Shown here piece by piece: positions 58,010-63,985 of a DNA stretch of 64,000 nt (its first letter is position 1; each line of letters starts with the position of its first letter). Where the stretch lies: contig NC_068998.1 of the NCBI RefSeq assembly GCF_001194135.2, positions 5,773,492-5,837,491 on the forward strand, in the 5' to 3' direction. Both the position numbers and the translations under genes were made by a program. The notes under the pieces were generated by a model, which did not search any database, was not told the origin of the DNA, and was given only the letters and a program-made list of their open reading frames with translations. The DNA comes from Octopus bimaculoides. Taxonomy: Eukaryota.

Positions 58010-58505
58010 TATATAGTTAGATAAGGCCAATTCATGGGATTACCCTGAGTTTCACGTCCATAGAGCGCTTAGCTTTATGGCGTGTCATCAGATCCTAAAA
58101 CTTGTTGACTTGAGGCCTCTCTAGAATATGAAGTTGGAAAGGACCTCGTTACTCAATGTCAACAACAGAGGATTGTCTCCCTTTGGCTATCATTCGAAAG
58201 TGACCCCATTATTTTGTGGGTTCCAATAGGCCAGCAGGAATTTCCTGAATTGCAAGCACGGATCGAGAGAATCCTTCAGAATATTCGCACGTGCCGCCAT
58301 GCATAGTTTACAATGCTTGGTTACGTTTATGTAGGGGCCTTGAATTTCTAGGATTCTCCATGCTATTGTGTATGGAATCCCGTCGTCTTTCAGGTGCCAT
58401 ACATGGGTGGCTAGTGACATAACGTATCTCCTTTTCGGTATCATGAAGGAGGATTTATATTATATAGAGTGTGCTTCTTTTCCGGATTTATGTCTTATCG
58501 ACTAT
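58010..58505 (-). mobile_element. 5'-truncated Penelope-like retroelement (GIY-YIG C-terminal remnant plus pLTR)
   Basis: SLATHVWHLKDDGIPYTIAWRIL...PYINVTKHCKLC resembles the PLE endonuclease tail; hammerhead motif follows. Confidence 0.75.
58037..58095 (-). ncRNA. Type-I hammerhead ribozyme motif in a Penelope 3' pseudo-LTR
   Basis: - strand: GGAU-CUGAUGA-cacgCCAUA...UAUGGacgu-GAAAC-UCAGG-GUA-AUCC, lying just downstream of a GIY-YIG remnant. Confidence 0.7.
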
Positions 58506-59847: not shown

Positions 59848-60317
59848 ATCGTTTTTTATTTTCAAGAATTTTCTTTTTTAGTTTCCCACCTGATGGATTT
59901 GTTAACGTGTGTGTGGGGGGGGGAGAGTGCTGCGGAGGCAAATGAAAGTTTTTGGAAAGCCGTTGTATAAAAGGAAATGTATATATTTGAGATATTTACA
60001 AATTGAAAAATGTAGAATTGGTATAAAAAATAAAAAAATAAAAAAGCCCCACTTTGAAGCATACACGCGTTACATCAGCCTACGCTTTATAGCAATATTT
60101 ATACACACTCACTTGAGCTGTCGCTCACATATACATATATATATATGCATTAACATCCAATGACGTACCGCTCTTTCATATATACACATACATACACACG
60201 CATACATTTATATATATATATATATATATATACATTGATTCACATACAATATATACATATATATATATATGGAAAAAAGACAAGGTAGAAGATGCTAAAA
60301 TACTTTTATAAAAAACA

Positions 60318-60360
60318 TTTCAGTACTGGTTTCGATCCTTGAGATCTTTTCAACTGTAAA
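60318..60360 (-). ncRNA. Minimal type-I hammerhead ribozyme motif, U3-A8 core variant
   Basis: - strand reads uuuaCAG-UUGAAAA-GAUC(ucaag)GAUC-GAAAC-ca-GUA-CUGaaa: stem I, core, perfect 4-bp stem II, short stem III, GUA site. Confidence 0.6.
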
Positions 60361-61137
60361 TATGGATAACAAATATATATATATGTATGTACATACACTT
60401 ATATACAATATATGTACATATATACAATTAAGCAACATGTACTATATACATACATGTACACACTATATATGCATATATGTGTTATATATGTTGTACATAC
60501 ACACACACGCACACGTTAGCACGATGTCATAGCAATGTGTATAATCAGACCACTCTCAAAAGATAATTAAAAAATAAAATAAACCCACTTAAATATCAAA
60601 ACCAATCCAATCAAGACCACGACTACTGCCAACACTAACACCAACACAACCACTCCCAGCATCATCATCATGAACATCAACGCAATAATTATCATTTCCC
60701 TCTTTCATAACATCCTTCTAATGATCGCTTTCCCATTGTAAGGCCTTCTGTTTGTTTTGTTTTTTTTTTGTTTTTTTTTTACAATAAAAGTGCATCGCAG
60801 GGGTCGCAGACATTTTGCAGTTCATCTTTTACCGTTTTTTTTTTTTTTTCCTTTTAAAATCTTACTTGAATTTCGCTTTATATCTTGCCTTTTTAAATAC
60901 ATTTAAAACACAATTTTTATCCATCTTTATCTCCTTTCAAATTTCCCATTAAATTCACTTTCAGTTGTTCACTCGGATCTTTGTTGTTCCTAGGTTGTCT
61001 TATTAAATTTTCCACCCCGCTTGCGACCAAGAATACAGTTTTTGAATATATTTACAACAAAATAGTTGAGCAATTTCATTTGTTATAATAATTCATTAGA
61101 AAATCTGTTTCTTTTTCTTTAAAAAAAAAATGTTTTT

Positions 61138-62004
61138 TTACCATTTTAATTTACCCGGGATATATTTTTCAATCAATTTTTCGTAATGTGGTCGGATTTC
61201 GTCAACGTCCGGAATGACGGGTGATTTGGTATACAAATCGAACGGGTTGAAATTTTGAACCCATTTCAACATTTCTTGATCTTTGTTGTCACACAGGTAA
61301 CCATAATCATTACAGGTGTGCCATGGGTAGAAAGAATGGTATCGAATGACACAGAGAGCTTCCTCGGGTAGGTAACAAGTGTTGTGTTTCAGTACTTGGT
61401 ACATGTACTCATCGTGGCCCCAAGACATGAGTACCTTACTCAGACCACAGTGTTCTTCGTAAATACCGAGTTTCGTGTTGAATTTCGGGTTGTTAAAATC
61501 GCGGTTGTCGTTGAAAGTACTGTCGGCATAAACGACCGAAGGAGCTGGTCTACAGCCGACCGGGTAGGTGTCGCCGACCACCGACCACTGCGGTGCACCC
61601 CAGAGGGCCATAACTTTACCTAGGTCGTGTATGAGTCCCGTCAACTGAAACCAGTCTTCGTCGGGGTACTCTTTACGTATTCCTTCTGCCGTTTGAAACG
61701 CATGGAAAGAGTTACTGAGATCGATGTCCGGGTCGGATTCATCCACCAAGTTGTTTAACATTTCCAGAGCTTCCATTATAGACATTTCAACATGATCGAA
61801 TCTGGTCCATCGTCCGTGGGATTCTTTCACAAAGTCGACAGTTTGAAACGTGTGCATTTGCTTGTAGGTGTTGTACACCTGCGAATCGGAATCACATTTG
61901 TCAAAGTTCCTGAAGGAATGGTTTTCTTTGGCCGCGTCGTGGTTATAAACCAGTTTCTCCCTTATAAACGGAGACATAATATTGCTGTCCAATGCAGCAG
62001 TCAT
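61138..62004 (-). CDS. MIOX: myo-inositol oxygenase, single exon, 288 aa
   Basis: Uninterrupted ORF; first ATG at 62004 (the track starts at TTG 62013). Motifs LVDESDPD, SFHAFQTAEGIR, GLIHDLGK, VVGDTYPVGC, MSWGHDEY, RYHSFYPWH, FDLYTK and C-terminal PGKLKW, with all HD-fold di-iron ligands present. Confidence 0.97.
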   Translation of the reverse strand: MTAALDSNIMSPFIREKLVYNHDAAKENHSFRNFDKCDSDSQVYNTYKQMHTFQTVDFVKESHGRWTRFDHVEMSIMEALEMLNNLVDESDPDIDLSNSFHAFQTAEGIRKEYPDEDWFQLTGLIHDLGKVMALWGAPQWSVVGDTYPVGCRPAPSVVYADSTFNDNRDFNNPKFNTKLGIYEEHCGLSKVLMSWGHDEYMYQVLKHNTCYLPEEALCVIRYHSFYPWHTCNDYGYLCDNKDQEMLKWVQNFNPFDLYTKSPVIPDVDEIRPHYEKLIEKYIPGKLKW

Positions 62005-63084: not shown

Positions 63085-63985
63085 GAATCGGACAATAAGC
63101 GTAAGCCAGTGTCAATGGTGGTGGTTCCAGAAATTCCGAGCCTGAAACTACAGCCTCGAAGACGAGTCTCGTCCTAGATCTGTAGATCTCCACTGGGGAC
63201 GACCTGCAAACCCTGATGGGACAAAATCCCATCATAACTGTTAAGGAACGAGCAGAGAAGCTTGGATTTGGTCATTCAACCATTCATCGACACCTGCGTG
63301 TCAGCAAATTGGGTCAACAGGTTTCTCACAAACTTTCCTGGTCTAATCGAGCGCAAAGAGTGAATGTGTGCTCTTCTTTGCTGTCACGTCTCACGAATAA
63401 TCCTTTTCTTTTTTAACCGAATAGTGACTGGTGACGAGAAATGGGTTCCCTATAAAAATGTCAAGCGCCGAAGACAGTGGGTGAGGAAAAGAGAAACACG
63501 GGCGCCCCAGGCTAAAGGTCTTCACCCACGTAAGGTGTTGTTATGTTTGGTGGGATATGAAAAGTTTAGTGCACTTTGGACTTTTAAACTCAAACCAAAC
63601 GATAACAAAGGAGATCTACTGCAAATAGCTCGAGCAGCTTAAGCCAGCGCTGGAAGAAAAACGACCATCTTTGGTTTGAAGACGGAAGGTGTTCTTCCAT
63701 CAGGATAATGCTCAGTCACATAGAGCGAGGATGACATTCCAAAGGCTGGAGCCGTTTGAATGGGAAACGATGCCCTACCCGCCATATTCGCCGGACATTG
63801 CCCCCTCTGATTATCATTTATTCCGCAGTCTTCAAAATCATTTGGACGGAAAAAATATGAATTCTGTAGACGAGGTTAGAAGAATACTGGATGAGTATTT
63901 TTCGTGACGGACAAGTGAATTTTGGAAGAGCCTTGTAAGTCTACCAGATAAGATGGAAGAGCATTGTAGAAAATGAAGAAGAGTA
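63085..63985 (+). mobile_element. Decayed mariner transposase (frameshifted)
   Basis: RIVTGDEKWV, HPRKVLL, FHQDNAQSH and PYPPYSPDIAPSDYHLFRSLQNHL are split over several frames. Confidence 0.93.

What the first reader, a model, noticed from the sequence alone, without database searches (positions are those of the whole stretch)
60318..60360. U3-A8 hammerhead motif inside the probable MIOX 3' UTR
Seen: on the MIOX strand, about 780 nt after the stop, the sequence folds as a minimal type-I hammerhead (CAG/CUG stem I, UUGAAAA core, perfect GAUC/GAUC stem II, GAAAC, 2-bp stem III, GUA site). I found no AATAAA or ATTAAA on - between the stop (61138) and this motif; the first AATAAA is at 59860-59855, beyond it. 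Known: C3-G8 is a tertiary pair that tolerates a U3-A8 swap, Penelope-like elements carry minimal hammerheads, and hammerheads in mRNA 3' UTRs can lower expression (rodent Clec2). Inference: a retroelement-derived ribozyme may cleave or define the MIOX mRNA 3' end.
Basis: partly seen in the sequence, partly recalled or inferred. Interest (0 to 1): 0.75.

Follow-up and report, generated by a model that had tools for sequence, protein, structure and literature searches.

The report
Lone hammerhead-like relic downstream of MIOX
About 780 bases after the octopus MIOX gene lies a 36-base sequence that spells out a hammerhead ribozyme; it probably arrived on a small Penelope-type retroelement fragment found only in this species, and it is unlikely to cut the MIOX message.

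Summary
Every invariant hammerhead core base is present, with the 3/8 pair as U-A.

It is not a convincing ribozyme:
- The drawn 2-bp helix III closes a 2-nt loop, which cannot form.
- The hammerhead fold is not the predicted structure, and disappears once 60 nt of flank are added.
- Two copies do not fold into a double hammerhead, whereas two canonical-core hammerheads in the same window do.

The window is Octopus bimaculoides. The roughly 105-nt block carrying the motif is absent from the orthologous site in O. sinensis and O. vulgaris, which have only a (TA)n microsatellite there. So it is not a conserved part of MIOX regulation.

Chance gives 0.007 to 0.09 such U3-A8 matches per window. 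However, the motif sits in a (TA)n-bracketed insert, a setting covering 2% of the window. The two genuine Penelope-type hammerheads nearby sit in similar settings.

Best reading (about 0.6): an inert relic or variant of a Penelope-type minimal hammerhead. Chance resemblance is about 0.3. A working cleaver of the MIOX 3' UTR is about 0.04. Whether the MIOX transcript reaches the motif could not be tested.

The parts
60321..60356 (-). Hammerhead-like motif in type-I topology. Stem I is CAG/CUG (3 bp), the core is UUGAAAA...GAAA with U3-A8, and stem II is GAUC/GAUC (plus a U-G pair) with loop UCAAG. The helix III positions read A-C-CA-G-U. The putative cleavage site follows A17, between 60324 and 60323.
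   Evidence: Sequence read. Descriptor hits. Energies. Dimer fold.
60271..60372 (-). Unique 102-nt block (TTTGTTATCC...CTTTTTTCC) that carries the motif. It is present in O. bimaculoides only and has no other copy in the window or in the orthologous loci.
   Evidence: Alignment A1 shows the block gapped in O. sinensis and O. vulgaris. BLAST breakpoints fall at 60373 and 60263. No homologue was found. The (TA)n bracketing is.
60373..60384 (.). (TA)n run flanking the block on its upstream side in the MIOX sense. Coordinates are approximate.
60247..60270 (.). (TA)n run flanking the block on its downstream side in the MIOX sense. Coordinates are approximate.
61138..62004 (-). MIOX coding sequence, 288 aa in a single uninterrupted ORF, with stop TAA at 61140-61138. 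It is context for the '3' UTR' claim only.
   Evidence: PF05153, E 7.7e-115.

Best explanation
The motif is an inert relic or variant of a Penelope-like-element (PLE) type minimal hammerhead. It was carried on a roughly 100-nt retroelement fragment that inserted into a (TA)n microsatellite about 750 nt downstream of the MIOX stop codon. This happened either in the O. bimaculoides lineage, or earlier with later loss in the O. vulgaris/O. sinensis lineage. In a full PLE such motifs are thought to work only as dimers in tandem transcripts. This copy is solitary, has a 3-bp helix I, and has no helix III that can form or pair with itself. It most likely does nothing to the MIOX transcript.

Shown: the sequence, its absence from relatives, the (TA)n bracketing, the presence of true PLE hammerheads nearby, and the failure to fold as a monomer or dimer.

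Inferred: that the insert is PLE-derived, and that it is catalytically inert.
For: - All invariant core bases are present, with the 3/8 pair as U-A. PMC4209133 reports this exact covariation in about 1,300 S. mansoni PLE mini-hammerheads.
- G10.1-C11.1 is present, which that paper lists as a hallmark.
- The block is missing at the orthologous site in O. sinensis and O. vulgaris, which have only (TA)n there.
- Only 2.0% of the window lies in segments of 150 nt or less bracketed by (TA)>=6 runs, and the motif is in one of them.
- The two canonical-core hammerheads the descriptor finds, 49752..49712 and 58095..58037 on the same strand, also lie in such segments.
- The 58-kb hammerhead follows an ORF homologous to GIY-YIG endonuclease C-termini of the PLE kind and is conserved in three Octopus species.
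- PLEs insert preferentially into microsatellites and cut AT-rich DNA (PMC8557442; PMC11167929).
- Evidence for inertness comes, and from the reports that single mini-hammerheads are inactive and dimers weak in vitro (PMC4209133; PMC6765202).
Against: - No second copy of the insert or of the motif family was seen, so there is no covariation evidence.
- There is no sequence similarity to the two real hammerhead-bearing inserts outside the core.
- Three PLE hallmarks are missing: no bulged base between A9 and 10.1, helix II of 4-5 bp rather than 6-8, and a helix III (ACCAGU) that is not palindromic.
- The palindrome that does exist, CAGUACUG, is centred on the cleavage site and predicts a non-hammerhead dimer.
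- Under a relaxed descriptor, chance gives up to 0.09 to 0.23 U3-A8 hits per window.
- The insert has no reverse transcriptase or endonuclease coding remnant.
- The octopus genome itself could not be searched.
Confidence: 0.6

Rival explanations
1. Chance resemblance. An AT-rich stretch of unknown origin next to a microsatellite happens to contain UUGAAAA, a 4-bp hairpin, GAAA and a UA step. The 3-bp 'stem I' is a by-product of the local palindrome CAGUACUG.
For: - A relaxed descriptor gives 0.23 U3-A8 hits per simulated window, or 0.085 with equal or better stems.
- The U3-A8 core is made of the commonest bases in this 64% A+T window.
- The descriptor was chosen after seeing the hit.
- The fold z-scores are unremarkable.
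- Several PLE hallmarks are missing.
- No related copy was found.
Against: - With Watson-Crick stems the expectation is 0.007 per window. It was 0 in 600 simulations under the strict descriptor.
- A chance hit would land in a (TA)n-bracketed segment of 150 nt or less only about 2% of the time. It would then also have to be the one large lineage-specific block in the 1.6 kb compared.
- Real PLE hammerheads in the same setting lie nearby.
Confidence: 0.3
2. One reading: a working ribozyme that self-cleaves inside an extended MIOX 3' UTR and lowers or defines the mRNA 3' end in O. bimaculoides.
For: - The core is intact, with a GUA cleavage triplet on the MIOX sense strand.
- O. bimaculoides has no AATAAA or ATTAAA between the stop and the motif.
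- The ATTAAA that the sister species carry at +491 and +495 is mutated to ATTTAA in O. bimaculoides, so read-through to the motif is conceivable.
- A 3' UTR hammerhead that reduces expression has a precedent in rodent Clec2 (my own knowledge: Martick et al. 2008).
Against: - The motif is absent from O. sinensis and O. vulgaris.
- Helix III is impossible as a monomer, and the hammerhead fold is 3 to 8 kcal/mol worse than the MFE.
- Stems I and II vanish from the ensemble in native context.
- There is no partner copy, and the predicted dimer is not a hammerhead, whereas both controls are.
- There is no stem I/II loop-loop architecture.
- Single PLE mini-hammerheads show no detectable cleavage in vitro (PMC4209133).
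- There is no evidence that the transcript reaches the motif.
Confidence: 0.04

Closest known systems
Minimal hammerheads of Penelope-like elements, especially the U3-A8 core variant described in Schistosoma mansoni Cercyon elements (Cervera and de la Pena 2014, PMC4209133)
   Same: Both are type-I, have the U3-A8 covariation in an otherwise canonical core, have G10.1-C11.1, and have a very short helix III and a short open helix I. Both mostly occur as single dispersed motifs from truncated elements. Both insert in an AT-rich or microsatellite context.
   Different: The candidate has no unpaired base between A9 and 10.1. Its helix II is 4-5 bp rather than 6-8. Positions 15.2-16.2 and loop 3 are not palindromic. 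No family of copies or covariation has been shown, and there is no adjacent PLE coding or pLTR sequence.
The two canonical-core PLE-type hammerheads in this same window (49752..49712 and 58095..58037, minus strand)
   Same: They lie on the same strand, are type-I, and sit in short unique segments bracketed by (TA)n.
   Different: They have C3-G8 cores and a palindromic or near-palindromic helix III. Two copies are predicted to fold into a double hammerhead. The 58-kb one follows a PLE-type endonuclease remnant and is conserved in three Octopus species. The candidate shares none of these properties and has no sequence similarity with them outside the core.
Canonical metazoan type-I hammerheads of non-LTR retrozymes (PMC7229834; description in PMC4209133)
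   Same: Both have a helix II of 4 bp and a helix III of 1-2 bp capped by a 2-4 nt loop.
   Different: Those have a 6-bp helix I closed by a loop, conserved loop 1/loop 2 tertiary contacts, a palindromic loop 3 and a tandem arrangement. None of these is seen here.
Discontinuous hammerhead in rodent Clec2 3' UTRs (my own knowledge: Martick et al., Nature 2008)
   Same: Both are hammerhead motifs on the sense strand downstream of a coding sequence.
   Different: Clec2 is a type-III discontinuous ribozyme with tertiary contacts. It is conserved across several mammals and was shown to cleave and to lower expression. Here there is no conservation, no tertiary contacts and no activity data.

Membership tests
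Hammerhead ribozyme (any type) | Conserved core: C3 U4 G5 A6 N7 G8 A9 ... G12 A13 A14, A15.1-U16.1, H17 | tested here: inconclusive
   All positions match except C3-G8, which is replaced by U3-A8. This covarying pair occurs naturally in PLE hammerheads (PMC4209133). The core is compatible with the family but non-consensus.
Hammerhead ribozyme (any type) | Three helices around the core that can form | tested here: not met
   Helix II forms with probability about 1 in isolation. Helix I has only 3 bp. Helix III as drawn closes a 2-nt loop and is forbidden, and a 1-bp version makes the fold +3.7 kcal/mol. The hammerhead is not the MFE structure, and it is lost once 60 nt or more of flank are added.
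Hammerhead ribozyme (any type) | Site-specific self-cleavage after H17 | not testable with these tools
   This needs in vitro transcription or RNA end mapping.
Rfam hammerhead families (Hammerhead_1, _3, _II, HH9, HH10) | Covariance-model score at or above the gathering threshold | tested here: inconclusive
   There was no hit even at E<=10 on 76 or 401 nt. The two canonical-core PLE-type controls in the window are missed as well, so the negative result says nothing.
PLE-type minimal hammerhead (PMC4209133) | Palindromic 15.2-16.2 and loop 3, allowing a dimeric active fold | tested here: not met
   ACCAGU is not self-complementary. RNAcofold of two copies gives a CAGUACUG duplex rather than a double hammerhead, while both controls give the double hammerhead.
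PLE-type minimal hammerhead (PMC4209133) | Unpaired nucleotide between A9 and 10.1, and a long helix II (6-8 bp) | tested here: not met
   A9 is followed directly by G10.1, and helix II is 4 bp plus one G-U pair. The 49.7-kb control also lacks the bulge, so the feature is not universal.
PLE-type minimal hammerhead (PMC4209133) | G10.1-C11.1 pair | tested here: met
   GAUC...GAUC follows A9 and precedes G12.
PLE-type minimal hammerhead (PMC4209133) | Belongs to a multi-copy consensus family with compensatory changes, located in PLE pseudo-LTRs | not testable with these tools
   No octopus genome could be searched. There are no other copies in the 64-kb window or in about 48 kb of related loci.
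PLE-type minimal hammerhead (PMC4209133) | Insertion context typical of PLEs (microsatellite or AT-rich target) | tested here: met
   The 102-nt block is bracketed by (TA)n, a setting that covers 2% of the window. It is absent from the orthologous (TA)n tract in two relatives. The target bias is described in PMC8557442 and PMC11167929.
Regulatory 3' UTR hammerhead (Clec2-like) | Lies inside the mature or nascent transcript of the gene and is conserved among related species | tested here: not met
   Conservation fails, since the motif is absent in O. sinensis and O. vulgaris. Transcript extent could not be tested, and poly(A) hexamers are not conserved.

The most novel reading that the evidence does not exclude
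A recently inserted, PLE-derived U3-A8 mini-hammerhead is transcribed as part of a long MIOX 3' UTR in O. bimaculoides, which has lost the ATTAAA that its sister species carry at about +490. It cleaves co-transcriptionally with the help of cellular factors. This would give a species-specific, ribozyme-mediated reduction or 3'-end definition of MIOX mRNA, caught at the moment a retroelement ribozyme is being co-opted.
Probability: 0.03. Interest if true: 0.55.

Novelty: new member of a known kind. Interest (0 to 1): 0.15.

Why it matters
If the best reading is right, this is one more dispersed Penelope-type hammerhead relic, of which metazoan genomes hold thousands. It matters only as an annotation. 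It would also be a small data point suggesting that the U3-A8 core variant, so far described in Schistosoma, may occur in cephalopods.

The result does not make any open question about ribozyme-mediated gene regulation testable, because the motif is neither conserved nor structurally competent.

A practical by-product is that Rfam 15 hammerhead models miss even canonical-core PLE-type hammerheads. Descriptor searches are therefore needed for this class.

Tried and rejected
- **Rfam scans** at gathering and at E<=10 gave no hammerhead hit. I rejected this as evidence because both positive controls also fail.
- **Hairpin or foldback element.** In context the insert's MFE is a long imperfect hairpin, but z = -0.73, so it is not significant. 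The termini show no terminal inverted repeats.
- **Shared family with the two real hammerhead inserts.** BLAST between the three inserts found only chance words.
- **Other copies of the insert** in the window or in the O. sinensis, O. vulgaris and Argonauta loci: none found.
- **More U3-A8 hits in the related loci:** none found.
- **Delimiting the 3' UTR.** Poly(A) hexamers are not conserved. The O. bimaculoides AATAAA at +1277 is absent from relatives, and their ATTAAA at +491/+495 is absent from O. bimaculoides. Identity stays at 80-90% well beyond any candidate end.
- **Transcript contigs.** The O. bimaculoides, O. sinensis and O. vulgaris MIOX proteins are on record only on genome contigs. 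Logan contigs of a 68%-identical MIOX from an unnamed organism stop at a genomic A-run and are uninformative.
- **Polarity of the indel.** Argonauta aligns only in the coding sequence, so there is no outgroup.
- **Identity of the 58-kb ORF.** Pfam and the word-based protein search found nothing. Only the exhaustive phmmer search did. Pfam on its hits gave one sub-threshold GIY-YIG match, so the PLE assignment rests on the motifs visible and on my knowledge of PLE endonucleases.
- **Lunse et al. 2017** on PLE hammerhead dimers is not held in the library.

Full report
**What is there.** The window is Octopus bimaculoides chromosome CM046618.1 of assembly GCA_001194135.2. On the minus strand, 60356..60321 reads CAG UUGAAAA GAUC UCAAG GAUC GAAA C CA G U A CUG.

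In hammerhead numbering, U4, G5, A6, A9, G12, A13, A14, A15.1, U16.1 and H17 (A, base 60324) are canonical.

MIOX is genuine. It is one uninterrupted ORF of 288 aa at 61138..62004 on the minus strand, matching Pfam PF05153 at E 7.7e-115. There is no AATAAA or ATTAAA between its stop and the motif. The first AATAAA is at 59860, and TATAAA occurs at 60882 and 60310.

**Does it fold as a hammerhead?** No.
- With a 1-bp helix III the hammerhead costs +3.7 kcal/mol. With none it is -1.5 kcal/mol.
- The minimum free energy (MFE) fold of the 36-mer is -4.8 kcal/mol, and it pairs core bases U3, U4 and G5 instead.
- With 10-30 nt of flank on each side, stems I and II persist. With 60 nt or more, their probability is about 0, because the AU-rich insert refolds.
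- Neither the motif nor the insert folds better than shuffled sequence (z = -1.0 and -0.7).

**Is it more than chance?** The answer depends on the descriptor.
- A strict descriptor fitted to the hit finds only this motif and one canonical hammerhead in the window, and none in 600 simulated windows. My own analytic estimate for it is about 1.6e-4 per window.
- A relaxed Penelope-style descriptor gives 0.23 U3-A8 hits per simulated window. The figure is 0.085 for stems at least as long, and 0.007 for Watson-Crick stems I>=3 and II>=4 (890 simulations).
- For the canonical core the expectation is 0.065 per window, and two are observed.
- On the motif alone, chance therefore remains a live explanation.

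**Rfam is blind here.** No Rfam 15 hammerhead model matches the candidate even at E<=10 on 76 nt. The same is true of two canonical-core hammerheads in the window. This negative result carries no weight.

**Comparative evidence.** The MIOX protein cluster led to orthologous loci in O. sinensis, O. vulgaris and Argonauta hians.
- Downstream of the stop, O. bimaculoides aligns with the two Octopus species at about 80-90% identity for more than 1.6 kb, with one large exception.
- That exception is the block 60372..60264, which has no counterpart. Both relatives have only a (TA)n tract at that point (alignment A1; breakpoints).
- No diverged copy exists elsewhere in their 20.9-kb loci.
- Argonauta aligns only in the coding sequence. 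The event could therefore be an insertion in the O. bimaculoides lineage or a deletion in the O. vulgaris/O. sinensis ancestor.
- Either way the block sits inside a (TA)n tract, and it is not a conserved feature of the MIOX locus.

**Context that points to a Penelope-type origin.** The descriptor scans found two other hammerheads on the same strand.

The first is at 49752..49712: GGC CUGAUGA AUGCC-AAUA-GGCAU GAAA GUACGUAC U C GCC. Its helix III, AGUACGUACU, is a perfect palindrome.

The second is at 58095..58037. It has a bulged C after A9, a long helix II and a 4-bp helix I, which are the hallmarks listed in PMC4209133.
- It lies about 95 nt after an ORF (58193-58444) that the exhaustive phmmer search links to 447 proteins (best E 5.8e-20).
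- The sequences of those proteins show the GIY-YIG endonuclease module of the Penelope kind. Pfam gives only one sub-threshold GIY-YIG hit.
- This element is conserved at about 87% in O. sinensis and O. vulgaris.

All three hammerhead-like motifs lie in short unique segments bracketed by (TA)>=6 runs, of 102, 201 and 487 nt. Such segments make up only 2.0%, 2.7% and 6.7% of the window.

The literature fits this picture. Penelope-like elements (PLEs) insert preferentially into microsatellites (PMC8557442), and their endonuclease prefers AT-rich DNA (PMC11167929). The U3-A8 core is a documented natural covariation, with about 1,300 copies in Schistosoma mansoni, mostly as single motifs from truncated elements (PMC4209133).

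This context is what moves me from 'chance' to 'probable retroelement relic'.

**What argues against a true PLE hammerhead.**
- No family of copies could be shown, because no octopus genome is searchable with these tools.
- The three inserts share nothing outside the core.
- There is no bulge after A9, and helix II is short.
- Helix III (ACCAGU) is not palindromic.
- In RNAcofold, two copies of each control fold into the textbook double hammerhead. For the 49.7-kb motif the dimer is 14.9 kcal/mol more stable than two monomers, and the O. sinensis version of the 58-kb motif does the same. Two copies of the candidate instead pair through the palindrome CAGUACUG, which buries the cleavage site.

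**Function.** Published single PLE mini-hammerheads show no detectable cleavage, and dimers cleave weakly (PMC4209133; PMC6765202). This copy is solitary, cannot dimerise properly, has a 3-bp helix I and has no loop-loop contacts. I judge it inert.

Whether the MIOX transcript even reaches it is unknown.
- Poly(A) hexamers are not conserved. The O. bimaculoides AATAAA at +1277 is absent from the relatives, and their ATTAAA at +491/+495 reads ATTTAA in O. bimaculoides.
- No transcript contigs were retrievable.

**Verdict.**
The letters are right, but the fold is not.
- Best explanation: an inert relic or variant of a Penelope-type minimal hammerhead on a lineage-specific insert (about 0.6).
- Rivals: chance resemblance (about 0.3), and a working 3' UTR ribozyme (about 0.04).
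- Novelty: a new member of a known kind. Interest is low.

Noticed in passing
window 49712-49752 (minus strand): A canonical-core minimal type-I hammerhead: GGC|CUGAUGA|AUGCC-AAUA-GGCAU|GAAA|GUACGUAC|U|C^GCC. Its helix III (AGUACGUACU) is perfectly palindromic, and two copies are predicted to fold into a double hammerhead. It lies in a 201-nt segment bracketed by (TA)n and is missed by Rfam.
   Followed up: partly
window 58016-58502 (minus strand); hammerhead at 58037-58095, ORF at 58193-58444: A 5'-truncated Penelope-like element. It consists of a remnant of a GIY-YIG endonuclease C-terminus (phmmer best E 5.8e-20, 447 hits) followed by a PLE-type hammerhead with a bulge after A9 and a long helix II. 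The element ends about 21 nt before a (TA)n run. It is conserved at about 87% in O. sinensis and O. vulgaris, with frame-breaking indels in the ORF.
   Followed up: yes
window about 49380-49418 (minus strand): A further CUGAUGA...GAAAC core with a weak helix II (C-U mismatch, 2 bp, UGAA loop) and a 3-bp helix I, about 330 nt downstream of the 49.7-kb hammerhead on the same strand.
   Followed up: no
window 63216-63907 (plus strand): Three short ORFs that look like fragments of a mariner-type transposase (YPPYSPDIAPSDYHLF...). The Pfam Transposase_1 match is at E 2.6e-4, below the curated cut-off.
   Followed up: partly
window 61138-62004; loci L002, L003, L004: The MIOX coding sequence is one uninterrupted ORF in O. 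bimaculoides, O. sinensis, O. vulgaris and Argonauta hians, whereas vertebrate MIOX genes are multi-exon (my own knowledge). It may be an old retrogene or a case of intron loss in octopods.
   Followed up: no
L005 13564-16113 and L006 13712-15851, against window about 58516: O. sinensis and O. vulgaris carry about 2.1-2.5 kb of extra sequence between the MIOX downstream region and the Penelope fragment. O. bimaculoides lacks it.
   Followed up: no
window-wide; Rfam 15 hammerhead covariance models give no match, even at E<=10 on stretches under 300 nt, to two canonical-core PLE-type hammerheads. Covariance-model scans will under-report this class in metazoan genomes.
   Followed up: yes
window 60560-60590, against L002/L003 about +491 to +514 after the stop: The sister species have ATTAAA and TATAAA about 490-515 nt after the MIOX stop. 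The O. bimaculoides sequence at the aligned position is ATTTAA. This may be a species difference in MIOX poly(A) site usage.
   Followed up: partly
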